Shown in pieces: positions 14,001 through 46,784 of a stretch of 64,000 bases of DNA. The stretch is from the IMG/VR virus record IMGVR_UViG_3300035703_000005, positions 184,836 to 248,835 of that record. One strand, 5' to 3'. The notes beneath the pieces were generated by a model that saw nothing but the letters and a program-made list of their open reading frames with translations, was not told the DNA's origin and made no database searches. Position 1 is the first letter of the stretch, and each line of letters begins with the position of its first letter. The translations under genes were made by a program, and so were the position numbers.

Positions 14001-17000
14001 GCTACTGCTGATGCTGGCAACAATGGTGCATAACCAAATCCGGTTGTAATTGCAACTTTAGAAATTTTACCAGCACTAGGAGTTCCAGATAAAAATCTTA
14101 CCACATTTTCGGAATTACCATCTATATCATAATCAACTTTTGGTTCTTGGAAAACATTATTGATAATAACAAAAGGATTATTGTTGATCAATGAAGAATT
14201 GTTTACATTATTAAAAATAGTTGTGGTTGTCTGACCACCAGATTTTAAAGTAAATTCTGTTGCGGCAATTCCAGTGAAAGATAAAGAAATATCGTCAAAA
14301 ATGATATTTTTATCTACTGGTTTTGAGGGATCAAATCTTCTAGTAAATACTCTACCAGAAAAAATAGAACCAGTTTCAAGACCAACTGGGCCAATTTTTC
14401 CATATGGAGCTGTTGTAAAGTAAATAACGTCACCATCAATATAATAATCTCCATTAAATATCGTTGCAGAAGCTCCTACAGTATGAATTCCAGAAACGCT
14501 ATTAAAATAACCCCTCTCCACATTTACAAAATTTGTCGAACCTATACCTATATTTTTAACAAGTAAGTATTCGGAATTAATATTGATTACATCATTGACA
14601 GCTAATGATGAAATTCCAGAAGAAACCTCGATAACTGAAGTTGTAGCAGTGGAAATTGGAGAATTTAAGGTAATTGCCAAAGATTTTCTTCTTAATTGAG
14701 TTTGTATTATTCCATCAATGGTTATAATTGTAGAAGGAAGTGGATCTTTATATTTTAAAGAATGTATGCCAGATCCTAGTCCAACAATATCAAAAAATAT
14801 ACTAGTAGATAATCCAGAAACCCTAAAGTTATTATCATCAATTTTATTGACAAATAAAGTTCGTGGTAATTTATCTGTACCTAGTACTGAAGGCGTAAAC
14901 GAAATACTATCATCTGGAGAATTTCCGCCAATATATGTTCCAGAAATAGATACTACGGATGTAGAAGCATATCCAGATCCTCCATTTACGACTTGAATTA
15001 AAGAAACAAGTCCATCATTGTCTCGATAAACATTAAAAATAGCACCTAATCCATTAGCATCGGTAGATGGTAAATTTAAGTAACTATTATTAGCTTCAGT
15101 CTGTATTCCAGTTGGTGCAGTTGCAGTAATAGTAAAACTTAAATCATTTGCTGGCGTAGACCCCTTAAAATAAGTACCCGCTATTGAAACCACATCCCCG
15201 ACTTTAAATCCAGATCCACCAGAAACTAATGAAAGGGATGTTGATAGAGGTTGACCTGTTCCAACGTCATATGTAATAAGTGCATTAAATTTAGCATTAC
15301 TTCCACTAGTAGTACCAAATCCAATAACATTTAAAAATAGTTGGTTACTTATTCCAGCTGGAACAACTACTGTAGAAATTCCTGTTATAGGACTAGTAAC
15401 TGCTTGTGCATATCCATTTTCAAAGATTGCTGTACCATCATAGTTTCCTACTTGCATTATTACGTCCAAATCACCAACAGCATAAGATGTTGTAGCAATT
15501 CCTATAGGCGATCCAATTCCATAATCATAAATCAATTCTTGTCCAGATTGGAAATTATGATTTATTGATGTAAAAGCGTTATTGGAGATATTGACTATCG
15601 CACTATCGGATGAATCAAATTCATATTTAAATAATGGAGTTCCTTTATTTTTCAGTTTAAATGTAGTTAATCCTACTACTGATCCGCTCCTAGAAATACT
15701 TGGATATACAACATTGGGAGCAGCAGTAGTACCAATTCCAATAATGGATGTTACTATCCCAATATAATTACCAATTGCAGACCAAACATCAGAACAACAA
15801 TTTTCATTATAAGTAGGACTACAAGAAGTATCCGCCAATATCCTAGTGTCAAATTGTTGAGGTTCCGTAAATACAGGTATTTGATATGAAGTGGATATAG
15901 CTACATTATTAATAACGTATTTCGATAAGTCAATAATATACTTAAATCCAGCTATAGTTTCTTCAGACTCTCCAGCTACATATGAAGTACCCAATCCACT
16001 CCAGTAAGCCAATCCGGCCTCAACAGACTTGTTATTTGATTTGTATTTAATGTCATGTGAGATTGCATCAACAATAAATCCAACATCTCTTTTGCAAATC
16101 TCACGATCCCAATCTATATTTGTTGTTATACCAGGATAAGACGAAGTAATAAATCCAACCACTTCCTCCTGAATAAACGATCTATTCAATTCCAAAAGAT
16201 CGGATGCATCAGCATATCTTCCATCCAATTCTTGAATAGAAGTTCCATCAAATTGGTCACTAATATCATCTATTGTTATGACTTTATTTGTTTTGTTGAT
16301 AATGAAATTTCTTAAAGATATCCCACCACTCAAAAATACTCTTTCAACTGAACCATCATCTAAAAAATCTTCTTCATATACTATAGTAAAGTTATCTTTT
16401 TCATATAGTGACTTGTGAGAATCTATATTTACCAAGAATGAAGATTGTTTATCGAGAACAGATGGTTTTAAATTGGTTGTTCTACCGATTCCGTGTGTTG
16501 CTTTGGTATAAATTTCCAAATCAGAAAATTCTTTAAATCCGGATGGGTGTATAATAGATCTTACAGACTCTCTCCAAATATCATATGGAATTTCACTCTT
16601 AATTGAATATGAAAACTTCTGGTAATAAAAATTATCGGAAATTCTTTGATTAAAATCGTTTAAAATTCCAACAGAGTTATCAATAACTCCCACCTTATCT
16701 CTAAATGGACCTAAAGTAGATCTTAGATTGAAACTATCATGATACTCTACTGTGCCTGTTATTTTTGATACTTCGCCGGTAATTTTATCTCCCGTTCTCA
16801 ATTCACCAAAAGAATTATTGGTTCTTAATTGATTTAAATCATTATCCCATCCATCTTCCATGACAATGGAAGAAAACTTAGTTGAAGTTACTCTTTCTTT
16901 AGAAAAATATTTAACATCATCAGCTAAAATCATATCAAAAACTGGCATGTCTTTTTTGTTTACGACATATCCCAAAGTAACTCCATCATCATACGTACCA

Positions 17001-20000
17001 AAAAGACCGGTAGATATTCCAGTCATATCATAAGTAACAGTATTATTCTGACTACTTATTCCAACTACTTCAAAAAATCTATATTCATATGATGAAGAAT
17101 TGAAATTAGACTTCGATTTTGTATTTGGAGTAAGTCTACAACCTTCGATAAAAATTTGATCACCAATTTCAAATGGGAAGATAAAATCAGTTTTACCATA
17201 TCCTGTAGAAATTAATGGATTAGAATTTGAAGAGTTAGCGAGTTCTAATGTTACCAAATCTCCAGAAACACTAATAAAATCAATATCATACCCATTAGAA
17301 TTGTAAATCGGTATAATATCGAGAGGTTCTGATAAATTAGTTACATTTTGGACAACATCAACTTTTACTATTGAACCACCACTGAGTTGAGGCTGTAACT
17401 TAATTTCTGTATTTTCTTTTACAAATAAAGTTGGTGGAGTATTATAATTTTTACCTCCAGTGATAATACCAATGTAATCAATTCTTCTTATATCTTTAAT
17501 TCCTATAACACTTGGTACACTTAATACAGGAGATAGAGTTGGATCTGTTGGATAATCAAATCCATCTTTAATTCTTTCTAAAGACTCTACTTTTCCAATG
17601 TTGGGAGAATTTAATTTTATTACTGCATCCTTACCTCTTTCGGATATAATGTTACTGACATATGGTAATTTGTCATACTTTCTGCCAGAAAAATTAATCT
17701 TAAGACTTGATATTGGACCATAAGCAGTTTTAGAACTAGTCAGATATTCAATTGTAGAGGATGCATAAGAATTTTTTTCTAATTCGGTTGGTTTATTTTT
17801 TAAATTAAAATTAAATACTCTATCAGAAGATTTATTAATAATAAATTTGCTATTTAATATATGAGATTTCAAAACAACTTTATTATTACCAATTACATCC
17901 TTATCGGAAGTAATTTGATTTTTTCTTTCATCTATTGGACTCTTTGGTAATAAGTTATAGTAAAGTAATTTTGGAAATCCAGAGATAGAAGTATCCAAAT
18001 CTACATATGATCCAGGGAATCCTGCAGTACCATTTCTCGTAATTGCAAATCCTATTTCAGTATTTCCTATAATTTCTAATTTCTTTTGGAAATCAACGTC
18101 AGCATAAAATTCCAGATACATATCAAGAATACTTGCATCTGAAAGATCAAATCTAATTACATTCCCATCAACAAAATGGAATGGAGGGTTTATTAAATAA
18201 AATCCGTGAGATGATCCGCCAACAGAATTGATATTTACTACTACATTATTTTTTATGTCAACTCTATTTTTGCATAGTTTTACATTATCAAAATCCGTTT
18301 TTAAGATATAATATACTTCATTATTTTGCAATCCATCGGCAGGATTACTGGAAACATATACTACTTTATCACCAGTTTTTAAACTGGTATCAGTTAAGTC
18401 AATTTTATTCTCATTTATGTTAATATCTGAATTAGTAAATTCAATTCTTTCTCCAGTAATTTTCCTGATTTCTGGATTATATAATATTTTTACAGAGTCG
18501 GTTTGATTATTAAATATTTTTAGTTCTATTTCATCACCGGTTAACAAATTGTGGTCCGCAGTAGTCGTTACTATTCCAGTAAATCTTTCCAAAGTTGACG
18601 TAACTTGGAAATTTTTTGTGGTTAATGAATGTGAAGCGCCTACAGTATTTAAAATATCATCAAAATTTACAAACTCTACACAATTTAAAGTTGTTCCTAT
18701 CCCACCAACACTACTAGTAAATCCTATAGTGGATATTCCAATATAATCAACACCAAAATTTACTGCATATACTGTTTGACCTTCATCAAAAGATATAGAA
18801 GTGGCGGATCCTACATTATTATATTTGAGTGGTGTACCATTAAATCCGGAAAAATAAGTTAATGGTTGACCAGTGTAAAACTTATGGTTTGGTATATAGA
18901 TTGATTTTTGTGGAATAAATCTAGATTCTACGCTACTTGTACCAATACCAACCAAAGACCTTGTAACTCCAGCCGTACCTGTTCCAACTGACTCACTAGG
19001 ATTGAAAAATACAATTTCATTTAAAGTAATAGAGTCGGAATTTGATCGTTCAAGATCAAATGTAAACTCAGTTGGTAGTAATTTTACTACATCAATTCCG
19101 GCTGTATGAACGCCTGTATTTTGAATTCTATTAACATAAAATCCAGATCTTTCTGGGGAAACTCCCGTAATATGAAGAATTTCGGTGCCTATGCCAATGA
19201 AATCATTTGATTTAAACCCGGAAATATCTTTTACGGTTATAAAAGTAGAAAGTCCGGTCGTAACTTGATCTTGAATATCATTTAGAAGTTCAATAGTTTT
19301 GTCTAAAACACTTATTACATGACTACCTTCAATAGTCGATGACGTTATAGTCGAAACTCCAGTAAGAATAATAGTTTCATTATTAACTAATTGATGAGGT
19401 TCATCAGTTTTTCCAACTACTTTTCTTGATTTAATATCAAAGTTAACTTTTATAATTTTATTATCGACAATAGAAAACTGTAAAACATCAGACCCCTTAA
19501 CTTTTGAAACTACAATATTTGCTCCACTTCCAGAAGTATTTTTATTTTCAATTACTAATCTATCGTCAACTTGATAATCTCTACCAGCTGAGAAAATAGA
19601 AGTTGAAGTGATTCCAGAAAAATTAACTGTATCTATTCTAAATTCTTGTTTATAATCTTCAGAAACTCTATCAATCAAATCGTAATATGAATTATTAAAA
19701 TTTAAATAATATGGACCGACATTTCTAGTTATGTTAAAAGTGCCAATATCAAGATCCTGATTAAAAACTGGTAAAAAGTTTTCTTTAATTGGTTGGTCTT
19801 TAAAATATTCACCAATTACATACGGATATGATGGAACAGAATTTCCAGTTGGATCAATACTTATGGATGTAAAATACGCATAAATTCCATCTGGATATTG
19901 TGGCGTTAAACACCATCTTCCATTATATTCATCAAGATCTCCAGAGCCCGTATAAACATAATCGTTAATGAAATATCCAGGCTCAAATCCCTGTGGACGA

Positions 20001-23000
20001 ACAAGTGGATCAGTGTTTGCCCTTAATTCATAACTGGTTCTTATTTGTCTAATAGAACCTCCAGATAAAGGATCATATCCATATGGACCATAAATTGGAT
20101 TTCCATCATATGCAAATCCAAGAATAGGTGAATGAGAAAGAGTATTTAAGTTCTCAGAATTGGTATCTGTAAAGTTATCATTTAATTGGAATCTGAGTTT
20201 TTTGGGAATATAGAAATTTATAAATTCTAATCCAAAATCTGGATTTTTACTTGGGTATAGAATTCCATCGTCTTCATCAGAAATTGATGGAATTGACTTG
20301 ACAACCTGATTTATTTTCCATTCAAATACATTGCCTAAAAATTTTGCATCCGACCCTCTATTAACAACTGACATGGTTGTGTTTGAGGATGCATATCCAA
20401 CACCACCAGAAATAATATTTACTGATACAACTCTACCATCTTCTATAATTGGATCAATCTGAGCAAACTGACCATTTCCATTAATTATAATGTCAGAGTC
20501 TTTTCTATATCCTCTACCTCTGTTGATAATTTTAACATCTCTAACGGTTCCGTTAATAATGATTGGTTTTAATACACATTCAGATATTATACTGGAAAAT
20601 CCTACATTAGGTCTTCTATGGTAATTTACAATATCCGTGCATCCATAAGAAACTCCACCATCTTCCAAATAAACATCAGTTATTGAACCAAGAACTATTG
20701 GTTCTAATAATGGTTGAACAATATCGGTTGATCCAATAGCAGATAATGCTTCTACTGAAACAGTTATTGCTGGATAACCAATAGTGTGAGTTCCAAATCC
20801 CAAACTAGAAAATTCTACAAATATATTATCAATGTAATTATTCCTAGTAGATGTTGTACCAATTCCCGCTTCAGATAACTTAAATTTATTTTTGTCGATT
20901 ACTTTTACATAATACTGAATTTGAGTAGATAATCCTGCAATTGGAGTACCAGTAGTTGAGTATTCAACTAATTCACCATCAGAAAAACGATGATTTGTAG
21001 CACAAATATATGAATCAAAGGTATTAATTCCAATGTTATCTTTTAAACTTAAAATAGAAGGTACTTTTACTTTTCTGTTGGAATATCCTTTACCAGGATC
21101 TTTAACAAATACTTGAGTAATAGTATTTTTACTTTTAATAGTTTCTATAACATGGAATCCAGAACTAATTCCTACTATATCAACCTCATTTACTTTATTT
21201 ACTGCATCTTGAAAAGTGTTGAAAATTTTGATTGAATTTGAACTGGTAATTCCAACAAAATACCTAGAACCATCAACTAAACCACCAATATTACTATTTT
21301 GATTAGATCTATAAATTACTTCTTCAGCGTCATCAAAATTGTGATCATTTAAAAAAGTAATAACATTAGTCAAAGTGTTTACTGCAGACTCTGGTCTAAA
21401 TCCTACGGATATTCTGGATTTAATTAAATTGGATTCTAAAATACAACCAGATCCATTTCCACCAGATATTGTAATTTTTGGTTTTGTTTGATAACCAATT
21501 CCTGGAGTTATTACTTTAACTGATTTTACTTCACCGACTAAATTGACATGTGCTTTCGCTCTAGATCCAGTATCGTCTTTAATTTCTAAAGGAGCAACAT
21601 TAATTACATCATAATTTTTACCAGAATTTGTAACATCAATAGAAACTAATTTTCCATAGTAAATGTTTTCATCAAAAAGAGTAGGAGATAATAATTCAAC
21701 TCCATTAGCCAAAAGTCCTACGGCTCTATTATTAGTTGTCCTATCATTTTTGTCATCAAAAACATTAAAAGCTCTGTTTAATCTAAACTTTTTTAATAAT
21801 TTTTGATTCTTTATTGTTTTATTCTCATATCCAGACTTGAAAAATCTATCGGATGAGATTCCAGAATTAAAACTTATATATTTTTTGGAAAAAAGATCAG
21901 TATTACTATAAGATAATTTAATATTATTATTATTGAGTTTAGTTACAAAATAATACCCTGTAGAAATTCCAGAAAAATTGCTGGAAATTGGATCATAATA
22001 AATTGAATCACCAGTGACTAAATTATGATTTTGTGAAAATAGTGTATCTGTAATGCCTGCTCCAGAACTAGAAGCATTTTTTTCCGTATTCTCTATGAAA
22101 AGAGTATAATTAGGTAGTCCTGTAGATGTTACATAGAAATTAGAATCTTCAGAATCTACATATGTATTCTGAACTCCTGATGGAATTTTTGAAAGTCCAT
22201 CAAAAAATCCACGATTATGATTTGCTTTATAAATTATCTTTTTTACAACTTTAGAATTTAAAAGATTAAATGTTGGATTTAAAGCCTGAACTACTAATCT
22301 GTTAGAATATTTTCTAATTGTATCTCCAGGATCAAATTCTACAGAAATTATAGAAACATTGGAAGAATTGTTAATTCCATCATCTAGTTTAATAATTTCA
22401 TCTTTATAAAAAGAGACTTTATCGTAGAGAACAACTCTAAATTTATTTGCGTCTAACTGAGAAACATTTTTTATTATGTGATTTGTAGGAATATTATAAA
22501 TCCAAGAATTAAATTGGAAAGAATCACTTAAATCTTTTCCGAATCCAGAAAGAGTAACTTTATCTCCTACTTTTAAATTAGAAGTTTTGGAAAAATCTAT
22601 AGAATCTATAACATTTACAATTCGGAAGTCTACTCTCGACGTATTTCCAAATCCAATATAACTAAAAGCAAATTTTTCTTCAACAATATCTAATCCATAG
22701 TCAAGATCTCTATCAATTCCAGTAACTCCTAAGAATTGATTATTTGTTTTATCCGAATAAAACAATTCTATTGTATTATAATTTTTGGGAGTTACTAAAA
22801 TTTTACCAGATTTGGAAAATCCAATGGTAGAGTCAACAAGAATAGTATCAGAATTTTTTGGAACACTCTCTAAAATTTTAGTTTTACCAGCAACTTGAAA
22901 TGCTCCTGATAATGAGGTCGAATCCAAAGAAATTTCGTATAAATTTTTATTTCTTAGTGGTCTAAATTCTACGTTAAAAATAGAAGCACTTACAGTTCCA

Positions 23001-23800
23001 ACACCACTAACATTTTGGAATAAAAAATTACCTCTAATTTGAGTAGGATCACCACCTGAAATTTTTTCTACTAATATATTCTTTGTAGTAAAATATGAAT
23101 TTGAAGATGGGATTATAGTAAAATCTTGAGGTTTAATAATTTCAATATCTTTATTATATAAAATTTTGAAAAGAATTTTATACGAAGTATCCGTTCCTTT
23201 AGACGTATAAAAATCTTTTGCTCGAATTAAAATATTTTTTACAGAAAGTTCGTCTACAAAATTTCTTGATTCAAATCCAGGTAAAAATTCAGATTTATAC
23301 TTTTCAAAAAATTCTTTGATAAAAAGATTACTTAAATTTTCTACAACAGAACCAGATGGATGTTCTGAAGCTTCAGTAGAAGAGAATGTTAAAAATTTGG
23401 AATCATCGACAGATTTTATTTTATCTATTCCACTAAAACCTCTAACACAATCTACAAATGAATTGGAAGTTTTTTCTTTGTAAGTAATAATCTCATTATT
23501 GATTTTCAACAACCCATAGGAGTCTGGCCAACCTTCAGTAGAATCGACATGTATTACATCATCAAAACTTAAAATCTCAGAAGTAGTTTGTGCAGAGGAA
23601 TTTAAGTTTGAAAAAGTAAAATTATCAATATTTTTATAACTAGGTAAATTTATTGATAAATCAATAGCTCCAGAAAAATGTTCTAAAGAATTATAGTATT
23701 CGGAAAGAAAAGCTTTAAAAAGTGGAGATTCCTCTGTCAAAAACTCAGGAATTTGAGACTGGAGGATATTATCGATTTTTACCTTTTTAGTGTTGGACAT
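11012..23800 (-). CDS. gp7: giant baseplate wedge initiator (gp7-like) with YHYH-type domain and beta-propeller repeats
   Basis: 4262 aa between gp6 and gp8; N-term ILQSQIPEFL..FLSEYYNSLE, FYTSKGT; many GxGY repeats; HSPILGFAYDGNPIYGPYG and DLDEYNGR..TPQYPDGIYAYF. Confidence 0.75.
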   Translation of the reverse strand: MSNTKKVKIDNILQSQIPEFLTEESPLFKAFLSEYYNSLEHFSGAIDLSINLPSYKNIDNFTFSNLNSSAQTTSEILSFDDVIHVDSTEGWPDSYGLLKINNEIITYKEKTSNSFVDCVRGFSGIDKIKSVDDSKFLTFSSTEASEHPSGSVVENLSNLFIKEFFEKYKSEFLPGFESRNFVDELSVKNILIRAKDFYTSKGTDTSYKILFKILYNKDIEIIKPQDFTIIPSSNSYFTTKNILVEKISGGDPTQIRGNFLFQNVSGVGTVSASIFNVEFRPLRNKNLYEISLDSTSLSGAFQVAGKTKILESVPKNSDTILVDSTIGFSKSGKILVTPKNYNTIELFYSDKTNNQFLGVTGIDRDLDYGLDIVEEKFAFSYIGFGNTSRVDFRIVNVIDSIDFSKTSNLKVGDKVTLSGFGKDLSDSFQFNSWIYNIPTNHIIKNVSQLDANKFRVVLYDKVSFYKDEIIKLDDGINNSSNVSIISVEFDPGDTIRKYSNRLVVQALNPTFNLLNSKVVKKIIYKANHNRGFFDGLSKIPSGVQNTYVDSEDSNFYVTSTGLPNYTLFIENTEKNASSSGAGITDTLFSQNHNLVTGDSIYYDPISSNFSGISTGYYFVTKLNNNNIKLSYSNTDLFSKKYISFNSGISSDRFFKSGYENKTIKNQKLLKKFRLNRAFNVFDDKNDRTTNNRAVGLLANGVELLSPTLFDENIYYGKLVSIDVTNSGKNYDVINVAPLEIKDDTGSRAKAHVNLVGEVKSVKVITPGIGYQTKPKITISGGNGSGCILESNLIKSRISVGFRPESAVNTLTNVITFLNDHNFDDAEEVIYRSNQNSNIGGLVDGSRYFVGITSSNSIKIFNTFQDAVNKVNEVDIVGISSGFHVIETIKSKNTITQVFVKDPGKGYSNRKVKVPSILSLKDNIGINTFDSYICATNHRFSDGELVEYSTTGTPIAGLSTQIQYYVKVIDKNKFKLSEAGIGTTSTRNNYIDNIFVEFSSLGFGTHTIGYPAITVSVEALSAIGSTDIVQPLLEPIVLGSITDVYLEDGGVSYGCTDIVNYHRRPNVGFSSIISECVLKPIIINGTVRDVKIINRGRGYRKDSDIIINGNGQFAQIDPIIEDGRVVSVNIISGGVGYASSNTTMSVVNRGSDAKFLGNVFEWKINQVVKSIPSISDEDDGILYPSKNPDFGLEFINFYIPKKLRFQLNDNFTDTNSENLNTLSHSPILGFAYDGNPIYGPYGYDPLSGGSIRQIRTSYELRANTDPLVRPQGFEPGYFINDYVYTGSGDLDEYNGRWCLTPQYPDGIYAYFTSISIDPTGNSVPSYPYVIGEYFKDQPIKENFLPVFNQDLDIGTFNITRNVGPYYLNFNNSYYDLIDRVSEDYKQEFRIDTVNFSGITSTSIFSAGRDYQVDDRLVIENKNTSGSGANIVVSKVKGSDVLQFSIVDNKIIKVNFDIKSRKVVGKTDEPHQLVNNETIILTGVSTITSSTIEGSHVISVLDKTIELLNDIQDQVTTGLSTFITVKDISGFKSNDFIGIGTEILHITGVSPERSGFYVNRIQNTGVHTAGIDVVKLLPTEFTFDLERSNSDSITLNEIVFFNPSESVGTGTAGVTRSLVGIGTSSVESRFIPQKSIYIPNHKFYTGQPLTYFSGFNGTPLKYNNVGSATSISFDEGQTVYAVNFGVDYIGISTIGFTSSVGGIGTTLNCVEFVNFDDILNTVGASHSLTTKNFQVTSTLERFTGIVTTTADHNLLTGDEIELKIFNNQTDSVKILYNPEIRKITGERIEFTNSDININENKIDLTDTSLKTGDKVVYVSSNPADGLQNNEVYYILKTDFDNVKLCKNRVDIKNNVVVNINSVGGSSHGFYLINPPFHFVDGNVIRFDLSDASILDMYLEFYADVDFQKKLEIIGNTEIGFAITRNGTAGFPGSYVDLDTSISGFPKLLYYNLLPKSPIDERKNQITSDKDVIGNNKVVLKSHILNSKFIINKSSDRVFNFNLKNKPTELEKNSYASSTIEYLTSSKTAYGPISSLKINFSGRKYDKLPYVSNIISERGKDAVIKLNSPNIGKVESLERIKDGFDYPTDPTLSPVLSVPSVIGIKDIRRIDYIGIITGGKNYNTPPTLFVKENTEIKLQPQLSGGSIVKVDVVQNVTNLSEPLDIIPIYNSNGYDIDFISVSGDLVTLELANSSNSNPLISTGYGKTDFIFPFEIGDQIFIEGCRLTPNTKSKSNFNSSSYEYRFFEVVGISSQNNTVTYDMTGISTGLFGTYDDGVTLGYVVNKKDMPVFDMILADDVKYFSKERVTSTKFSSIVMEDGWDNDLNQLRTNNSFGELRTGDKITGEVSKITGTVEYHDSFNLRSTLGPFRDKVGVIDNSVGILNDFNQRISDNFYYQKFSYSIKSEIPYDIWRESVRSIIHPSGFKEFSDLEIYTKATHGIGRTTNLKPSVLDKQSSFLVNIDSHKSLYEKDNFTIVYEEDFLDDGSVERVFLSGGISLRNFIINKTNKVITIDDISDQFDGTSIQELDGRYADASDLLELNRSFIQEEVVGFITSSYPGITTNIDWDREICKRDVGFIVDAISHDIKYKSNNKSVEAGLAYWSGLGTSYVAGESEETIAGFKYIIDLSKYVINNVAISTSYQIPVFTEPQQFDTRILADTSCSPTYNENCCSDVWSAIGNYIGIVTSIIGIGTTAAPNVVYPSISRSGSVVGLTTFKLKNKGTPLFKYEFDSSDSAIVNISNNAFTSINHNFQSGQELIYDYGIGSPIGIATTSYAVGDLDVIMQVGNYDGTAIFENGYAQAVTSPITGISTVVVPAGISNQLFLNVIGFGTTSGSNAKFNALITYDVGTGQPLSTSLSLVSGGSGFKVGDVVSIAGTYFKGSTPANDLSFTITATAPTGIQTEANNSYLNLPSTDANGLGAIFNVYRDNDGLVSLIQVVNGGSGYASTSVVSISGTYIGGNSPDDSISFTPSVLGTDKLPRTLFVNKIDDNNFRVSGLSTSIFFDIVGLGSGIHSLKYKDPLPSTIITIDGIIQTQLRRKSLAITLNSPISTATTSVIEVSSGISSLAVNDVININSEYLLVKNIGIGSTNFVNVERGYFNSVSGIHTVGASATIFNGDYYIDGDVIYFTTAPYGKIGPVGLETGSIFSGRVFTRRFDPSKPVDKNIIFDDISLSFTGIAATEFTLKSGGQTTTTIFNNVNNSSLINNNPFVIINNVFQEPKVDYDIDGNSENVVRFLSGTPSAGKISKVAITTGFGYAPLLPASAVATVSAAGTISAISLTGAGSGYRQNINVSIASTIGSGASITASVGAGGTVTGFTIVNAGSGYTTTSLPTVVIGIPTSYSNLGVAYTGGSSGVGQGAKISVTVGQGSSIISFKIDNPGIGYKVGDVLSVIGITTNPGLSTSFEEFTLTVKEIQNDKFNGFYPGQFIKFDDISSNFNGFRKKFTLSVTTNNVREILSLRTIPGSDLNITNNIFVYINDVLQTPESSYTYSGSRIIFKEAPKENSTCSILYYRGSSIDVEQIEPPKTIKEGDVIIIRENKNDLLDIDQFDRTVKKIISSDQFDTFTYNSVGITTDSTKDRPLTWIKQTQDKIISGSLYSKSRPSIRSRVKPNAHVIKKIVPTDESIYIDNAYPLFSDVDSVAEDLRDLVIGENRITEDAICTSVVSSSSSISSIVISDGGVGYAYTGNPVVTISRSSITRKDPIKDWKPSTGISSLYDLNSISYTGKYVVAVGDNDTFAYSLNGSSWQASSVGFGITISYNSIIGVGTNRYFVGGSYGTVATAVSVGNTIGPWSAINLLREIVTPTVGVTARVSAGYTGPISDITYSSYLDTVVVVGLSSIFSGVGIGTTTLISRFSGTLQTLNSLAYGPSNIIAVGNDSVILSSVNGVIWEDLLSPTTANLNKVIHVDGEFVAVGDFGTVIKSTNSFTFNLVTTNISEDIIDISYNDFYVILTSLGNLYYSFDLSNWVLRETNQVNNLRSGLFINEIGLEGRYIFVGSSGTSIYADPIYNRATAISNVTAGVVTSVTIINGGFGYSQSNAPSVLIEPDSPKTEFVRSFKVMGDYGTIIGINTFVAGTPGIGTTSPKVEFVLKSEFYDNSTLGIGYSSLNSFGITYSQLSKGDYFVITNSNVTVGHALTGITTSLGGMSNYPASRVGTSTEFLDGVYIVENVTNAASGIVTVTCNFAPIEGPTGNYVEVYKRGENNTGINTNNFYGRYSWSKIFDYENRVLGSPKQFDVYTNNGLVGLLTGPMISRTRDL

Positions 23801-25670: not shown

Positions 25671-26068
25671 TAGACTCTAGTTGGTTGTAAAATAAATTCT
25701 ATAATTTGAGGAGGAACTGACAAACCAACAATATCATAGGATATTCGTACATTCAAATCATTAGAATCTTCTGGATATGAAACAACTACAGAACTTTTTT
25801 TAATTCTAGGTTCAAAGTTTTTAAGTAATGTTTCAATTTCAAGTTGCAAAGAATATGCAACAGTTGGTGATTGCAATTCAAAAACAGAATCTTCAATCTT
25901 TGTTCCGAGAATGTAGTTATAAAATCGTTCACCCAGCCTTGTTCTGACCAAATTTATAACAGATTTTTTAATGGCATCCTCATTCGTAATTGAAAGAATG
26001 TCATTAGTCACAGGATTTCTCGCAAATGAGAGACTAATATCTTTAAATTTGCGAGAAATCCTAGTCAT
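25670..26068 (-). CDS. gp25: baseplate wedge subunit gp25
   Basis: 132 aa; FKDISLSF..NP, AIKKSVINLVRTRLGERFY, FEPRI; adjacent to gp6. Confidence 0.92.
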   Translation of the reverse strand: MTRISRKFKDISLSFARNPVTNDILSITNEDAIKKSVINLVRTRLGERFYNYILGTKIEDSVFELQSPTVAYSLQLEIETLLKNFEPRIKKSSVVVSYPEDSNDLNVRISYDIVGLSVPPQIIEFILQPTRV

Positions 26069-26108
26069 TACTCAAACTAAGGGTATTTATTATATGTATA
26101 ACACCTTT

Positions 26109-26366
26109 TTACCACTTTTTTCCGTAAATTGGTTCAGTACCATACTCCCAATCATCATAATCCTCATCATTACGAATTTTTTCATGAAGATCTGTTTGTT
26201 TCAATAAATCATGTTTTGGTGCTTTATCGTACATAACCTCGGAAATAACTTTTTTTTCGTTATTTTTTGAGTTTTGGATCATAGAATCATAGTCAGTGAT
26301 TAATTTTGTGGTTCCCCACATCTCTCTCATGTAATTTTTGTCTCTGTCTACGGGTAAATTTGACAT
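26109..26366 (-). CDS. conserved cyanophage hypothetical protein
   Basis: 85 aa, MREMWGTTKLITDY...DDWEYGTEP; precedes gp25. Confidence 0.65.
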   Translation of the reverse strand: MSNLPVDRDKNYMREMWGTTKLITDYDSMIQNSKNNEKKVISEVMYDKAPKHDLLKQTDLHEKIRNDEDYDDWEYGTEPIYGKKW

Positions 26367-26408
26367 TTTTAGCTCCTGATTAAAAAATCAGAACTTTTTA
26401 CGGGGTTG

Positions 26409-26876
26409 CTATCCCGAAATGTCTGTATTTTCTACAATTTTTAAGTCTTCTCCAAGAATTTCTGTCAGGTACTCCTTTGACCAAAAGCTATAATAGTCAG
26501 TTTCAGACAATTTTTTGCGAATTCCATTCAATTTTTTCTTAGATTGACATAAAATCAGATTAAATTTTTGATTATTAGTCTGGACTCCACCAATAAATGT
26601 CGGACTAGAGGATAAATCTTCAAAAAACTTATAATAAGAGAATTTTTCATTGTAAAATTGGACCCATTTCTTAATTTGATCAGGTCTCCAAAAATCTTCA
26701 ACAATAAAAACGATGACATCGTACCCAGATTCCGGTTCAATGTCATCGATGGGAGTCTCTACGATTAAAGTTTTTGATGAAGAAGCATATGGACAAATAG
26801 CAAATCCACCCAACTCAGGTCTTTGTTTAGATACTTCACGTATCCATTCATGAATGTATGCTTCTTTATCTGTCAT
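26409..26876 (-). CDS. hypothetical protein (DUF1415-like CPYA motif)
   Basis: 155 aa; WIREVSKQRPELGGFAICPYA. Confidence 0.55.
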   Translation of the reverse strand: MTDKEAYIHEWIREVSKQRPELGGFAICPYASSSKTLIVETPIDDIEPESGYDVIVFIVEDFWRPDQIKKWVQFYNEKFSYYKFFEDLSSSPTFIGGVQTNNQKFNLILCQSKKKLNGIRKKLSETDYYSFWSKEYLTEILGEDLKIVENTDISG

Positions 26877-26877
26877 A

Positions 26878-27036
26878 TTATCCTGCTGCTAGAGGAGACA
26901 TAGGATTTGGTTTTGGTGGAGCAACTGTTCTTGCATTTGATGCAACATCATATCCAAAAACCTTTGCTTCTTCTGGGGGTTGTTCCGGAGAATCCGCGGC
27001 AGTTGGTCCAACTTTTGGTGTTTGTTCTTCTGTCAT
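26878..27036 (-). CDS. small hypothetical protein
   Basis: Hand-translated 52 aa MTEEQTPKVGPTAADSPEQPPEEAKVFGYDV...; below ORF-track cutoff, tiles the operon. Confidence 0.55.
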   Translation of the reverse strand: MTEEQTPKVGPTAADSPEQPPEEAKVFGYDVASNARTVAPPKPNPMSPLAAG

Positions 27037-27083
27037 TTTTTTATAAATTTTATTTAAAATTATTTAGACTTTTTCCTCTTGAA

Positions 27084-27227
27084 TTATTTACCTTGACCTC
27101 GGTATGGTTTCCGAGCTTTGTTACGACTTGTAGCTGCATACTTAGTATGTTTTCCAAGTCCTTGAAGAGTTTTCTTAGGAGTGGATTCAATTACAGCTTT
27201 TCCACCAGATGATTTTTTTACAGCCAT
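27084..27227 (-). CDS. small basic conserved cyanophage protein
   Basis: Hand-translated 47 aa MAVKKSSGGKAVIESTPKKTLQGLGKHTKYAATSRNKARKPYRGQGK; GAGG SD upstream. Confidence 0.7.
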   Translation of the reverse strand: MAVKKSSGGKAVIESTPKKTLQGLGKHTKYAATSRNKARKPYRGQGK

Positions 27228-27293
27228 TTTAATACCTCACAATTGGTTTTTTACGCGCCGATTTAAACGCGCCGAACATAAAAATTAAAGAAT

Positions 27294-27319
27294 TCTAGGG
27301 GTTTCAAAGAACCCCTAGA
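27294..27319 (-). terminator. intrinsic terminator hairpin
   Basis: 10-bp perfect stem TCTAGGGGTT/AACCCCTAGA right after the stop at 27323, T-rich tail on minus strand. Confidence 0.75.
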
Positions 27320-27322
27320 GTA

Positions 27323-28075
27323 TCAGATAATACGAGTCTTCTCGTGACCCACACGAATCTTAGGATCGCACCAGATCTCAAATCCCGCTGCCTTTGCATC
27401 CAGACAGAAGGATACGTCTTCACCGCACATATCTTGAACTTCTCCAGAGTCAAACACTTGCATCTTCGGAGCGAACCAAGGATACTCTAGAGACTCAAAA
27501 ACACCATTCTTAATCAACACCCAACCGAAACCAGTATAGTCCACGGTAAAGGGCTTACGACGCTTCGTCATCGTTTCACCAGTCTCATGGTTCATGACTC
27601 CGCCATTGTTCTTAAAGTCATCTTCTTCAAGCCAATGAGCAACAGAAGTCGTATGACCATCTTCAGTCATATACCAACCAGCTGCAATGTCCTTATCCAT
27701 TGCAACGAGACGATAGAATTTTTCCGTATCGAAAACAATATCATTATCAATCCAGAGTTGGTAATCATACTTCAGTTTACCATCCCAAGGAATCTGTTTT
27801 GGACCACGAAGAACGTTTGCACCAAGAACCTTGCAACGTGCAAAGTTAACCATGGAAGAGTAGTCCTGTGAAATTTGAATACTTGCACCATTCTGGACAA
27901 GATCAAAACAAAGTTGAACAAAATTCTTTAGAAAAATATAAGAACATCCACGACCTGGAAGACAGAAAACAATCGATTTGCCACGAATCATATCTTTTGC
28001 TTCTTGCAAATCAAATTCGTCTTCGTTCTTTTTTGGAGTTGGAACTGTTGCTTTAATTGTGAATCCTTTTGACAT
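27323..28075 (-). CDS. conserved cyanomyovirus glycosyltransferase-like protein
   Basis: 250 aa; IVFCLPGRG, MVNFARCKVLG, WIDNDIVF (DxD), DMCGEDVSFC, IRVGHEK: GT-A-like motifs. Confidence 0.7.
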   Translation of the reverse strand: MSKGFTIKATVPTPKKNEDEFDLQEAKDMIRGKSIVFCLPGRGCSYIFLKNFVQLCFDLVQNGASIQISQDYSSMVNFARCKVLGANVLRGPKQIPWDGKLKYDYQLWIDNDIVFDTEKFYRLVAMDKDIAAGWYMTEDGHTTSVAHWLEEDDFKNNGGVMNHETGETMTKRRKPFTVDYTGFGWVLIKNGVFESLEYPWFAPKMQVFDSGEVQDMCGEDVSFCLDAKAAGFEIWCDPKIRVGHEKTRII

Positions 28076-44121: not shown

Positions 44122-44450
44122 CCCTTGGATTTTGGTTTTGCGGGGGAACCCTTGGTGGCCTTGGGTTTTGATCCCTGAGAACCCTTGCGGCCACTAGACG
44201 GTTTCGCCTTTTTTTGCGATTTTTGGCTCACAGGGGTCTTACTACCCGTCTTGCGAACCCGATGCGAGTTTTTTAATTGTTCAAGCCGAATCTCTGCAAG
44301 CTGCCGAGTATCAACTACTTCAAGCTGTTGACCATCTGCAATAATCATGTATTGATTACCAAAGGGTACAGCAGCAAACTGAAAGTCTGGTGTGGTGAAT
44401 CCAGTGGGGCCATTGTCTGGATCCAAAATACTTGTGTTTGGAAAGTTCAT
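44061..44450 (-). CDS. early protein with Lys/Pro/Ser-rich tail
   Basis: 129 aa; GFTTPDFQFAAVPFGNQYMII then a low-complexity basic tail that runs through the next promoter. Confidence 0.6.
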   Translation of the reverse strand: MNFPNTSILDPDNGPTGFTTPDFQFAAVPFGNQYMIIADGQQLEVVDTRQLAEIRLEQLKNSHRVRKTGSKTPVSQKSQKKAKPSSGRKGSQGSKPKATKGSPAKPKSKGVTKPKPSTKSTNPLLDALS

Positions 44451-45553
44451 CGTTTGACAACAGAGATTGCAGGTTGGCCTTGTTGGAAGATTGTATCCAC
44501 CACAGCTTGGATCTTCTGGTGAGTAGAGATCCCAACTTTATTGAAGACGGGAACAACAACCAGACCAAAAGATTTGGTGTAGTTGTCAACATCACCAGGA
44601 ACCAGTTCACCACTACGGATGCGAGCTGCATCATCATGGTGCATCCGAATCACACGGCCAATGGTCTGGGAGATACCAATGTAGTCCATAGATCGCATGA
44701 AGATGACACCTTCCAAACCACTCACATTGATGCCCTCAGAGAGGATAGAATGGTGTAGCACAACAAACTTCTTAGAGTCATCCTTGCCCCATGCACTTAG
44801 GGTCTCAAAGAATACCTCACGATTCACCTTCTGACCGTTGATAATTGCACCAGTCTTTGCGGTGATGTAGAGATACGAGAACCCACGATCTTGCAACTGT
44901 TGAATGAAATCAGTCTCAGACATCAGTGCAGAGATCTGTTTGGTAGCTTTCGCACAGATTAACACTTTGTCCTTACCACATTCATCCAGAGTCTCAATCA
45001 GATTCTCACAATCTCGGTGTGCAGGAATCTTACCAGACTTCACCATCGGAAGTTGTTTCGCAAGAACTTTCGGAGGAAGGATGTAACCGCCTTGCACAAG
45101 TTCAGGTGCAGGAACATTACAAATGACCTGACCATAAACCTCAGGATCATTCATCCCAGGCTTACCGACTGCGAGAGAATGTTTGGGAGTCGCAGTGAAG
45201 AAGTAACAACGGTCAGCTTCGTGACTGAAGTATTCAGTTGCAGGGAAGAAGTTGCGTTTGACTGAGTTGTGAGCTTCGTCAAAGTAGATGGTATCAACTT
45301 TGATGCGAGATTGCTGCAGTCGTTCCAGAGAATTGTAAGTGGTGAAGATCAGTTTGTGACCGCGAGTGTTCACCCACCAGTCCACAATCTCTTGAGGTTT
45401 GGTAGTAGAATAGTGATGAGTTTCACCCGAGTGAACATGCAGAACACTTGCGTTGGTGATAAACTCTAGAAACTCAGAACACAACTGGTTGGCCAGAAGG
45501 ATGCGCGGAGCACAAACTACAATAGTCTTTTCAGTTTGCATTTGCGTTTGCAT
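44447..45553 (-). CDS. SF2 (DEAH) helicase, main portion lacking Walker A
   Basis: Motifs Ia APRILLANQ, II DEAH, III TAT, V LSEGIN, VI QTIGRVIR; Walker A lies in the upstream overlapping frame. Confidence 0.85.
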   Translation of the reverse strand: MQTQMQTEKTIVVCAPRILLANQLCSEFLEFITNASVLHVHSGETHHYSTTKPQEIVDWWVNTRGHKLIFTTYNSLERLQQSRIKVDTIYFDEAHNSVKRNFFPATEYFSHEADRCYFFTATPKHSLAVGKPGMNDPEVYGQVICNVPAPELVQGGYILPPKVLAKQLPMVKSGKIPAHRDCENLIETLDECGKDKVLICAKATKQISALMSETDFIQQLQDRGFSYLYITAKTGAIINGQKVNREVFFETLSAWGKDDSKKFVVLHHSILSEGINVSGLEGVIFMRSMDYIGISQTIGRVIRMHHDDAARIRSGELVPGDVDNYTKSFGLVVVPVFNKVGISTHQKIQAVVDTIFQQGQPAISVVKR

Positions 45554-45692
45554 CGTTTTGTTGGAATTGAATCATTGCATCTTTGATCATTTTCATCGTT
45601 TTCCCGCCACCAGTCGGGACGATTATCTGACCTTTGTTATGCAGTTGCATTAGATCAACTGCGCGTTGTTGGTGTGGTCGGAGATTCATCAT
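45531..45692 (-). CDS. N-terminal 53-aa fragment of the SF2 helicase (Q motif and Walker A), frameshifted
   Basis: Hand-translated MMNLRPHQQRAVDLMQLHNKGQIIVPTGGGKTMKMIKDAMIQFQQNDANANAN*. Confidence 0.8.
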   Translation of the reverse strand: MMNLRPHQQRAVDLMQLHNKGQIIVPTGGGKTMKMIKDAMIQFQQNDANANAN

Positions 45693-45696
45693 TGCG

Positions 45697-45766
45697 TTTC
45701 AACATAGCTAGAATACCCCTTACCCGTGGCCAGGGCAAGGGGCTGAACGATCAGAGATCCTTATGA
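45697..45766 (-). promoter_or_regulatory. sigma70 promoter with GATC-rich upstream element
   Basis: TTGCCC-17-TATTCT; upstream + strand CTGAACGATCAGAGATCCTTATGA. Confidence 0.7.
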
Positions 45767-46249
45767 GAAAAAGGTCGATCTATTAAGTTCTACAACGTAG
45801 TCAAAGACCTTTTTGAGTTTTTCTTCAGTCAGATCAAAACAAGATCCATAAAGATCGAAAGGAAGTTTGAAAGTTTGTTCTGCAGTCTTCTGCGGATTTG
45901 TTGACATAAATCTGTCAATTTTAGGACAAGAATTGATCTTGTTGAACATTTTTGGAAACTTGGAAGAAAACTCAGAAACATATTTGTATTTTGTGTCCGA
46001 GAATCTCCGAGAAATATCTTTAACAACTACATCATACTCACATTCACTGATGAAGTTCCAACGTTTTTTACAAATACTTTTAAGTCCCCTGAGATATAAT
46101 TCTCCAGGATTCAGTTGTTCAAGAGCTTCTCTGATAATCAAGTCTTTGATAGATGTAGTCCAACTCAAGGAAAACTCTGAATACTTTTCTTTCAGATTTG
46201 TGATTGTGGGTTTGTCGGTGATTGGGCAGTTCATAGTGGTTTGAATCAC
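45761..46249 (-). CDS. hypothetical protein
   Basis: 162 aa; preceded by TTGACT-17-TATTCT (46284-46256). Confidence 0.6.
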   Translation of the reverse strand: MIQTTMNCPITDKPTITNLKEKYSEFSLSWTTSIKDLIIREALEQLNPGELYLRGLKSICKKRWNFISECEYDVVVKDISRRFSDTKYKYVSEFSSKFPKMFNKINSCPKIDRFMSTNPQKTAEQTFKLPFDLYGSCFDLTEEKLKKVFDYVVELNRSTFFS

Positions 46250-46295
46250 AGGCCAAGAATAACGACAAGATTTTGAAAAGTCAAGAGGTTTTGGA

Positions 46296-46784
46296 TTAGG
46301 AAACCTTATCAGTGGTATAAGTATAATCTATGTTACATGCGTAGAGAACTTTCATCATTAAGTTCAGCGATCTCTGGTGCGGTCGTTGTTTCCACCCATA
46401 CCACTGAGTTCTTTTGCCTTTGTCGTATGGGGGATTCTGACCAACAGACCAGTATTGTTCAGCGGTTACATCATAGATTGTTTCGCCATCTTGCAACCAC
46501 CAATGAGTATCATTTCGGTAGTCAATTCCACTCATAGGAACTAACTTATCTGTGTTCATTAGATAGAACAAAGCCTGGGTGGAATGATAACAATGTCCGT
46601 ACATTGGATTTGTTACATTTTCTTCTCGGTATTTCTTGGTGAGAAGATCAGGACTCAATTGATTTTGAATCACTTTCATGACTGATTCAGTAATCTCATG
46701 AGTATAGTAAAAGGGGAGAAATCCCAGAGTGCGAGTCTCTGAGATCTCTCCATCTTTGTAAGAATGTCTTACAACTTGTTTCAT
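46296..46784 (-). CDS. Cys-His-Asp (transglutaminase/papain-like) putative hydrolase
   Basis: 162 aa; YGHCYHS, THWWL, IYDVT in catalytic-triad order and spacing. Confidence 0.5.
   Translation of the reverse strand: MKQVVRHSYKDGEISETRTLGFLPFYYTHEITESVMKVIQNQLSPDLLTKKYREENVTNPMYGHCYHSTQALFYLMNTDKLVPMSGIDYRNDTHWWLQDGETIYDVTAEQYWSVGQNPPYDKGKRTQWYGWKQRPHQRSLNLMMKVLYACNIDYTYTTDKVS

What the first reader, a model, noticed from the sequence alone, without database searches (positions are those of the whole stretch)
44447..45692. SF2 helicase split by a +1 frameshift at a short tandem repeat
Seen: the Q motif (LRPHQ) and Walker A (PTGGGKT) lie in a 53-aa ORF (45692-45531). Motifs Ia-VI are in the +1 frame (45553-44447). 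The switch occurs at CAA-AAC-GAT-GCAAAC-GCAAAT-GCAAAC-TGA, an A4 run plus a GCAAAY x3 repeat, and the second frame has two ATGs overlapping the first ORF's end. Both halves are otherwise intact with their promoter. Inference: programmed frameshift, slipped-strand phase variation, a translationally coupled split enzyme, recent pseudogenisation, or an assembly error.
Basis: seen in the sequence. Interest (0 to 1): 0.6.

Follow-up and report, generated by a model that had tools for sequence, protein, structure and literature searches.

The report
Naturally split phage helicase gene
A core helicase gene of a freshwater cyanophage-type virus is really cut into two overlapping genes (a 53-residue piece carrying the ATP-binding loop and a 368-residue remainder), and the same cut is found in many wild relatives under purifying selection, so it is most likely a working two-piece enzyme and not an error, a dead gene or a programmed frameshift.

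Summary
A 53-aa ORF (45692-45531, minus strand) holds the Q motif and Walker A. A 368-aa ORF in the +1 frame (45553-44447) holds motifs Ia-VI.

It is not an assembly error. An independent assembly of the probable source run reproduces the junction with no differences.

It is not unique. At least 20 other assemblies carry the same break at the same loop, in 11 sequence variants of two types:
- Type A, as in the window: the C-ORF lies +1 to the N-ORF and overlaps it by 23 nt, or 26 nt where a variant has an earlier ATG.
- Type B: the C-ORF lies -1, with an ATGA or TGATG stop/start overlap.

The two types share a homologous C-ORF start. They differ by 4 nt upstream of it. Every variant keeps at least two in-frame ATGs.

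Both halves show dN/dS of about 0.03-0.2 among split alleles. A complex model rebuilds the first RecA domain from the two chains (0.81, best control 0.01).

Best reading: a translationally coupled split gene whose two products assemble. It co-circulates with continuous alleles. Programmed frameshifting, phase variation, pseudogenisation and error are poorly supported. Translation and assembly are inferred, not shown.

The parts
45531..45692 (-). ORF-N, 53 aa. It carries the Q motif (LRPHQ, 45669-45683), strand 1, Walker A/motif I (PTGGGKT, 45597-45617), helix 1 and a new tail, NDANANAN, before the stop.
   Evidence: The exact protein is also called on an ENA contig with the same layout. 21 clusters of similar short N-fragments are on record.
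44447..45553 (-). ORF-C, 368 aa (364 aa if started at the second ATG). It carries a new head, MQTQMQTEK, then motifs Ia, II (DEAH), III (TATP), IV-VI and the C-terminal region.
   Evidence: PHROG 16 'DNA helicase' matches at E 5.8e-49. Identity to cultured cyanophage helicases is 57-67%.
45527..45560 (-). Junction cassette of 34 nt, between the conserved QFQ codons and the conserved TIVV codons. Continuous relatives have 15-18 nt here.
45531..45553 (-). The 23-nt overlap of the two ORFs. It holds ATG 45553-45551, ATG 45541-45539 and the ORF-N stop TGA 45533-45531.
44447..44450 (-). ATGA stop/start overlap of ORF-C with the next gene (44450-44061). It shows the usual gene-junction style of this genome.
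   Evidence: At least eight 4-nt overlaps lie on the minus strand between 42.9 and 50 kb in the ORF list.

Best explanation
The window belongs to a complete 249-kb T4-like, cyanophage-type virus genome. Its second SF2 helicase is a gene found as one ORF in over 400 cultured cyanomyovirus records. In a freshwater clade of this virus type that gene has been converted into two overlapping cistrons.

Origin (inferred):
- An insertion of about 23 nt entered the surface loop between helix 1, which follows the P-loop, and the motif Ia strand.
- It introduced a stop for the upstream part and ATG codons for the downstream part. This is type B, with an ATGA or TGATG overlap.
- A later 4-nt deletion just upstream of those ATGs gave the window's type A. 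Here the upstream ORF reads on for eight more codons into the start of the downstream ORF, and so looks like a +1 frameshift.

How it most likely works (inferred):
- ORF-N is translated to its UGA.
- ORF-C is started at AUG 45553 or 45541, either independently or by termination-reinitiation.
- The 53-residue piece supplies the Q motif, the central strand and the P-loop. It co-folds with the 368-residue piece to rebuild RecA domain 1.
- The pair then works as the ordinary helicase.

Shown: the sequence layout, its recurrence, selection on both halves, retention of the ATGs, and an in-silico complex. Not shown: translation of both ORFs, their assembly, and any activity.
For: 1. The break is real DNA.
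- The Logan contig of the probable source run (3292 nt, depth 47.7) covers 45090-46500 with 0 differences and 0 gaps.
- A contig from an independent freshwater study covers 45437-45652 with 10 substitutions and no gap.

2. The break recurs.
- 21 protein clusters of short N-fragments (48-83 aa, about 104 member sequences) end at this site. They come from ENA, JGI and Logan, on contigs up to 18 kb.
- DNA from IMG/VR, JGI, ENA and Logan loci gives 11 distinct junction sequences, 5 of type A and 6 of type B.

3. The junction has the layout of two cistrons.
- Types A and B share a homologous 23-nt block that is in frame with ORF-C.
- They differ by 4 nt upstream of it, so ORF-N lies +1 or -1 to ORF-C.
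- Every variant keeps at least two ATGs in the ORF-C frame. The type B stops overlap an ATG as ATGA or TGATG.
- The same overlap style joins neighbouring genes in this window.

4. Both halves are under selection among split alleles.
- Pairwise dN/dS is 0.03-0.2 for the N part and 0.03-0.17 for the C part in most pairs, with dS up to about 1 or saturated. A few N-part pairs reach 0.36.
- Within two split-only clades the N part has 17.5 synonymous against 5.5 non-synonymous changes (P = 7e-8 against neutrality).
- All C parts are open over 359 codons.

5. The cut is in a permissive place. It falls in a loop of variable length (residues 45-50 of a continuous relative), between helix 32-44 and strand 51-56.

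6. The complex model supports binding.
- Score 0.81, best of 3 controls 0.01.
- In calibration that mark was reached by 51 of 78 solved complexes and by 2 of 108 mismatched pairs.
- The runs agree in at least 95% of contacts, and the partner's pLDDT is 80-82.
- The N strand (residues 21-24) sits between ORF-C residues 114-123 and 140-149 and also touches 87-94.
Against: - No expression, protein or activity data exist. Only contigs could be laid, not raw reads, so heterogeneity inside a population was not examined.
- Continuous alleles with nearly identical flanks co-circulate and interleave with split ones on the C-part tree (at least 5 label changes). Recombination may therefore carry 'selected' sequence into split alleles and inflate the signal of selection.
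- The genome has another ResIII helicase of 499 aa, so loss of this one might be tolerated.
- No Shine-Dalgarno-like sequence is evident before the ORF-C ATGs (read from the sequence).
- The complex model may simply recall single-chain helicase folds.
- Splitting a RecA domain at its central strand is structurally demanding.
Confidence: 0.72

Rival explanations
1. Programmed recoding. Ribosomes shift +1 (or hop) in the overlap and make one fused helicase. ORF-N alone is only a termination by-product.
For: The two frames overlap by 23 nt. The zero-frame stop follows directly, as at prfB-type sites. Both halves are under selection.
Against: - Close relatives of type B would need a -1 shift at the homologous place, and type A differs from them only by 4 nt. 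Two opposite recoding mechanisms in one clade is unlikely.
- No known shifty motif is present. The last codon before the stop is AAC, and its tRNA cannot re-pair at +1.
- No X XXY YYZ heptamer occurs in type B (read from the sequences).
- There is no stable RNA structure: z = +1.0, and 166 of 200 shuffles fold at least as well.
- No matched take-off and landing codons are conserved, which argues against hopping.
- The conserved ATGs would not be needed under this model.
Confidence: 0.06
2. A non-functional (null) allele. The helicase is broken in these strains and persists because it is dispensable, or because recombination keeps reshuffling the broken junction into intact flanks.
For: - Continuous alleles co-exist and interleave with split ones on the tree.
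- A second SF2 helicase is present in the genome.
- Only this clade shows the break: 3 of the 6 closest IMG/VR loci, and none of the 74 more distant ones.
Against: - dN/dS is about 0.1 in both halves, also inside split-only clades.
- No secondary stops or indels occur in any of about 20 split loci.
- All 11 junction variants keep start codons placed at the upstream stop.
- The gene is present in 418-419 cultured cyanophage records, i.e. it is core-like.
- Split alleles are frequent and found in many studies.
Confidence: 0.13
3. A sequencing or assembly error in this contig.
For: None beyond the general frequency of frameshift errors in metagenomic contigs.
Against: - An independent assembler gives the identical sequence from the probable source run.
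- The difference from continuous relatives is 19 nt, not 1 nt.
- The same junction occurs in many unrelated assemblies.
Confidence: 0.01
4. Slipped-strand phase variation that switches the helicase on and off through the GCAAAY repeat or the A4 run.
For: Short imperfect repeats are present. Both in-frame and out-of-frame alleles exist in nature.
Against: - The unit is 6 nt, so copy changes keep the frame.
- Each type has a fixed length (34 or 38 nt) in all samples.
- Continuous alleles have unrelated 15-18-nt linkers and are not repeat-number variants.
- TRF finds no array, and A4 is too short for frequent slippage.
Confidence: 0.03

Closest known systems
Cyanomyovirus 'helicase' (T4-like gene cluster 36; PHROG 16), e.g. 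S-SCSM1 SSCSM1_238, S-SKS1 SWZG_00243, S-SM2 SSM2_068
   Same: Orthologous sequence, with 57-67% identity over the C part, all SF2 motifs and the same length when the two ORFs are summed.
   Different: Those are single ORFs of 391-412 aa. Here the gene is two overlapping ORFs, cut between motif I and motif Ia.
Naturally split enzymes that assemble from separate subunits, e.g. Nanoarchaeum equitans and Methanopyrus kandleri reverse gyrase (PMC4117796), and the 'genes-in-pieces' NrdA of phage Aeh1 (from my own knowledge, not checked here)
   Same: A protein that is one chain in relatives is encoded as two genes whose products associate.
   Different: - Those splits lie between modules or were made by an inserted homing-endonuclease gene. 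Here the cut lies inside RecA domain 1, after the P-loop helix.
- Nothing sits between the pieces.
- Split and unsplit alleles co-exist in one viral population.
T4 uvsW / uvsW.1 (PMC1524935)
   Same: It is a T4-type phage SF2 helicase locus once read as one ORF and later found to be two adjacent ORFs.
   Different: uvsW.1 is a C-terminal 76-aa ORF outside the motor core. Here the small ORF is N-terminal and carries catalytic motifs. This gene is not uvsW: a separate 499-aa ResIII helicase lies elsewhere in the genome.
Programmed +1 frameshift genes (prfB type)
   Same: A zero-frame stop lies inside an overlap with the +1 frame.
   Different: There is no shifty codon and no stimulatory element, and relatives have the opposite frame relation.

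Membership tests
SF2 helicase/translocase (Pfam ResIII/DEAD + Helicase_C) | Q motif and motifs I, Ia, II, III, IV-VI in order, forming two RecA-like domains | tested here: met
   All motifs are present when ORF-N and ORF-C are read together. ResIII profile positions 2-50 fall on ORF-N and 51-163 on ORF-C, and Helicase_C falls on ORF-C. The fold of a continuous relative matches SF2 motors such as LlaBIII, ISWI, RadD and XPB at E down to 2e-15.
SF2 helicase/translocase (Pfam ResIII/DEAD + Helicase_C) | Motor core on one polypeptide | tested here: not met
   A stop at 45533-45531 and a frame change separate motif I from motif Ia.
Cyanomyovirus helicase (T4-like GC 36 / PHROG 16) | Orthology to the helicase conserved in cultured cyanomyoviruses | tested here: met
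   PHROG 16 matches at E 5.8e-49. tblastn finds 419 records for the C part and 418 for the N part.
Translationally coupled overlapping cistrons | The start codon of the downstream ORF lies at or within a few codons of the upstream stop, and this is conserved among relatives | tested here: met
   All 11 junction variants keep at least two ATGs. The overlaps are ATGA, TGATG or 23-26 nt.
Translationally coupled overlapping cistrons | Downstream translation depends on upstream translation or termination | not testable with these tools
   This needs reporter or ribosome-profiling experiments.
Programmed ribosomal frameshift | A conserved shifty site with a stimulator, and a conserved frame relation among relatives | tested here: not met
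   The frame relation is +1 in type A and -1 in type B. The junction RNA folds no better than shuffles. No known motif is seen in the sequence.
Simple-sequence contingency (phase-variable) locus | A repeat tract whose copy number varies among strains and toggles the frame | tested here: not met
   TRF finds no array. The length is fixed within each type, and a 6-nt unit cannot toggle the frame.
Pseudogene | Relaxed selection and further disruptions | tested here: not met
   dN/dS is 0.03-0.2 in most pairs. 17.5 synonymous against 5.5 non-synonymous changes in the N part of split-only clades (P = 7e-8). No further stops.
T4 UvsW | Orthology to UvsW | not tested
   One database record labels a homologue UvsW. 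The genome holds a separate 499-aa ResIII helicase that fits UvsW better by size. No direct comparison was made.

The most novel reading that the evidence does not exclude
The split is not merely tolerated but maintained. Delivering the P-loop on a separate 6-kDa peptide would give these phages a benefit, for example a regulatory one or escape from a host defence that recognises or inhibits the intact helicase. That would explain why split and continuous alleles persist side by side across many freshwater populations. It would be a natural case of an SF2 RecA domain assembled from two chains.
Probability: 0.12. Interest if true: 0.8.

Novelty: new variant of a known kind. Interest (0 to 1): 0.6.

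Why it matters
- **Annotation.** It shows how to tell a real split gene from a frameshift error or a recoding site using comparative data alone. The signs are opposite frame relations with a conserved start codon, and purifying selection on both pieces. Pipelines would flag this as a pseudogene or merge it wrongly.
- **Enzymology.** If the two pieces do assemble, this is a natural fragment-complementation system. The Q motif and P-loop of an SF2 motor are supplied in trans by a 53-residue peptide, cut inside a RecA domain. That placement is unusual among known split enzymes and is directly testable.
- **Population biology.** Split and unsplit alleles co-exist in wild phage populations. This offers a natural experiment on the cost or benefit of gene fission.

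Tried and rejected
- Tandem Repeats Finder at the junction found nothing.
- The RNA fold of 45470-45600 is no better than shuffles.
- The promoter scan found no site directly upstream of ORF-N.
- phmmer of ORF-C against PDB sequences gave no hit at E 0.01. The fold search gave only generic SF2 motors.
- Literature searches for a split cyanophage helicase or a naturally split helicase with Walker A in trans found nothing on this case.
- Translational hopping was considered and dropped. No take-off and landing codon pair is shared by the variants, and the only downstream AAC in frame would delete motif Ia (read).
- A second split site upstream of Walker A was suspected from proteins that start at MPTG (P0003, P0020). 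It was rejected because the upstream frame is open and holds LRPHQ, so these are gene-caller starts.
- The insert may derive from a duplication of an upstream 18-mer. The resemblance is only weak (12 of 2000 shuffles score as well, low-complexity sequence).
- One contig of run X5 crosses the junction with 2 gap letters whose position was not listed. This is unresolved, and the single read-laying run was already used.
- The exact 368-aa ORF-C is not on record as a called gene.
- The large profile search was not run.

Full report
**Context**

The window is the last 64 kb of a single 248,835-bp virus record. IMG/VR classes it as linear and CheckV estimates it at 100% complete. The helicase and its neighbours match T4-like cyanophages (Kyanoviridae). 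The best cultured matches of the large ORF are S-SCSM1 (67%), S-SKS1 (64.5%) and S-T4 (61%), and 419 phage records hold a homologue. Runs that hold the stretch are subsurface and freshwater metagenomes from 12 studies. The host was not determined.

**Observation**

On the minus strand a 53-aa ORF (45692-45531) reads MMNLRPHQ...PTGGGKT...QFQQNDANANAN and then stops. A 368-aa ORF in the +1 frame (45553-44447) begins MQTQMQTEKTIVVCAPRILL and carries motifs Ia to VI.

Pfam ResIII is cut cleanly between them: profile positions 2-50 fall on the small ORF and 51-163 on the large one. PHROG 16 'DNA helicase' matches both. Cultured relatives have one ORF of 391-412 aa.

The break falls in the variable linker between the helix after the P-loop and the motif Ia strand. 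In an AlphaFold model of a continuous relative this is loop 45-50, between helix 32-44 and strand 51-56 (mean pLDDT 69).

No consensus promoter lies directly upstream. TRF sees no tandem repeat.

**Not an artefact**

Logan's independent assembly of the probable source run gives a 3292-nt contig (depth 47.7). It covers 45090-46500 with no differences and no gaps. A 221-nt contig from an unrelated freshwater study crosses the junction (45437-45652) with 10 substitutions and no gap.

The exact 53-aa protein is also called on an ENA contig with the same gene order and an overlapping downstream gene.

Compared with continuous close relatives, the window does not differ by one base. It has a 34-nt junction where they have 15-18 nt.

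**The break is widespread and comes in two forms**

A search with the 53-aa piece alone found 21 clusters of short proteins (48-83 aa, about 104 member sequences). They come from ENA, JGI and Logan and sit on contigs up to 18 kb. All end at this site, either as ...QFQQNDA(N/T)ANAN or as ...QFQ(Q/E/N)Q(K/N).

I fetched DNA from IMG/VR, JGI, ENA and Logan and catalogued the junction between the conserved QFQ and TIVV codons. There are 11 distinct sequences.
- Five are type A: 34 nt, ORF-C +1 to ORF-N, and an overlap of 23 nt, or 26 nt where a variant has an earlier ATG. The window is one of these.
- Six are type B: 38 nt, ORF-C -1 to ORF-N. The ORF-N stop overlaps an ORF-C ATG as ATGA, or abuts it as TGATG.

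The last 23 nt of both types are homologous and in frame with ORF-C. They give MQ(T/M)Q(M/S)QT(E/G)K. The two types differ by 4 nt just upstream: one type B variant minus CAAA gives type A exactly. Every variant keeps at least two ATGs in the ORF-C frame.

Among the six IMG/VR loci closest to the window (90% identity or more), three are split and three continuous. None of the 74 more distant loci is split.

**What this implies**

A 4-nt indel upstream of the ORF-C start is harmless only if ORF-C is initiated on its own. It merely changes the tail of ORF-N, from QK-stop to NDANANAN-stop. Under a frameshift model the clade would need a +1 mechanism in some members and a -1 mechanism in others at the same place.

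The signals expected of frameshifting are also missing:
- No shifty codon is present. AAC before UGA cannot re-pair at +1.
- Type B has no X XXY YYZ heptamer.
- The junction RNA folds no better than shuffles (z = +1.0).
- No take-off and landing pair for hopping is shared.

Stop/start overlaps of 4 nt are the normal junction between genes here, including between ORF-C and the next gene at 44447-44450.

**Selection**

Among split alleles the N part (42 codons) shows dN/dS of 0.03-0.2 in most pairs, with a few reaching 0.36. Its dS runs from 0.1 to saturation. The C part shows 0.03-0.17 with dS of 0.2-1.0.

Within two clades that contain only split alleles, the N part has 17.5 synonymous against 5.5 non-synonymous differences. 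About 79% non-synonymous would be expected if it were neutral (P = 7e-8). No split locus has a further stop or indel over the 359 aligned codons of the C part.

There is a caveat. On the C-part tree, split and continuous alleles interleave, with at least 5 label changes and some split alleles nearly identical to continuous ones. The junction has therefore moved by recombination or changed state repeatedly. Part of the constraint seen could have been acquired in continuous backgrounds.

**Assembly of the two pieces**

A complex prediction of ORF-C with ORF-N scored 0.81, against a best control of 0.01. In the tool's calibration that mark was reached by 51 of 78 solved complexes and by 2 of 108 mismatched pairs. 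The three runs agree in at least 95% of contacts, and the partner's pLDDT is 80-82.

In the model:
- The ORF-N strand (residues 21-24) lies between ORF-C residues 114-123 (the strand ending in TATP) and 140-149.
- It also touches 87-94, around DEAH.
- The ORF-N helix packs on ORF-C residues 9-35.

This is the ordinary first RecA domain rebuilt from two chains. It supports the model, but it may reflect the predictor's memory of single-chain helicases.

**Family**

The enzyme is a generic SF2 motor. Foldseek's best matches are the motor of the Type ISP enzyme LlaBIII, ISWI/Snf2, RadD and XPB. phmmer finds no PDB sequence. The genome has another ResIII helicase of 499 aa, a better candidate for UvsW.

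I found no paper describing this split. Precedents for enzymes made from split genes exist, such as the split reverse gyrases (PMC4117796), and for two ORFs at a T4 helicase locus, uvsW/uvsW.1 (PMC1524935). Those cuts are not inside RecA domain 1.

**Verdict**

The feature is real. It is best explained as a translationally coupled split helicase gene whose products assemble (confidence about 0.7). The main rival is a tolerated null allele (about 0.13), followed by recoding (about 0.06). Error and phase variation are close to excluded.

It is a new variant of a known kind. Interest is moderate to high because the cut lies inside a catalytic domain and because split and unsplit alleles co-exist in nature. 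Translation, coupling, assembly and activity remain to be shown.

**Limits**

- Only contigs could be laid, not raw reads, and the one call allowed was used on 2501 bases.
- The 2 gap letters in one X5 contig were not located.

Noticed in passing
window 11012-23800 (-) and 1870-9375 (-): Two giant ORFs of 4262 aa (one YHYH domain, E 1.2e-21) and 2501 aa (DUF4815, E 3.2e-60) lie in the 30% G+C part of the window. They are probably virion or fibre proteins.
   Followed up: partly
window about 26000-28000: G+C rises from about 0.30 (1-26 kb) to 0.40-0.47 (28-50 kb) within one phage genome. The low-G+C block coincides with the giant ORFs.
   Followed up: no
window 45689-46305: Contigs from other freshwater runs join about 45689-45722 to about 46282-46305. 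Related strains therefore lack the 162-aa ORF at 45761-46249, which has no PHROG match.
   Followed up: no
window 45715-45760: A G+C-rich hairpin (CCCCTTGCCC...GGGTAAGGGG) followed by TATTCT sits just upstream of ORF-N. A similar hairpin plus TATTCT is seen upstream of the helicase in relatives L150 and L151. It may be a terminator/promoter module. The consensus scans did not report it.
   Followed up: no
window 45693-45715: An upstream ATG that extends the helicase in frame in relatives (MLKRDL... or MLRRNS...) is out of frame in the window, because the leader is 5 nt shorter. The conserved start is therefore the Met before (I/N)LRPHQ.
   Followed up: partly
window 44540-44620 (ORF-C residues about 305-328): An insertion of about 18 aa after motif VI (HHDDAARIRSGELVPGDVDNYT) is shared with S-SCSM1 and the freshwater clade. 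It is absent from S-SKS1, S-SM2 and S-T4.
   Followed up: no
window 45485-45526; loci L007, L089: Two split sub-clades have Cys in the motif Ia strand (TIVVCAPR or TIVVCCPR), where continuous and other split alleles have TIVVVAPR. It is not universal among split alleles.
   Followed up: no
G000:C1:152174-152611 (outside the window): A second ResIII-type SF2 helicase of 499 aa lies in the same genome and is a likely UvsW candidate.
   Followed up: no
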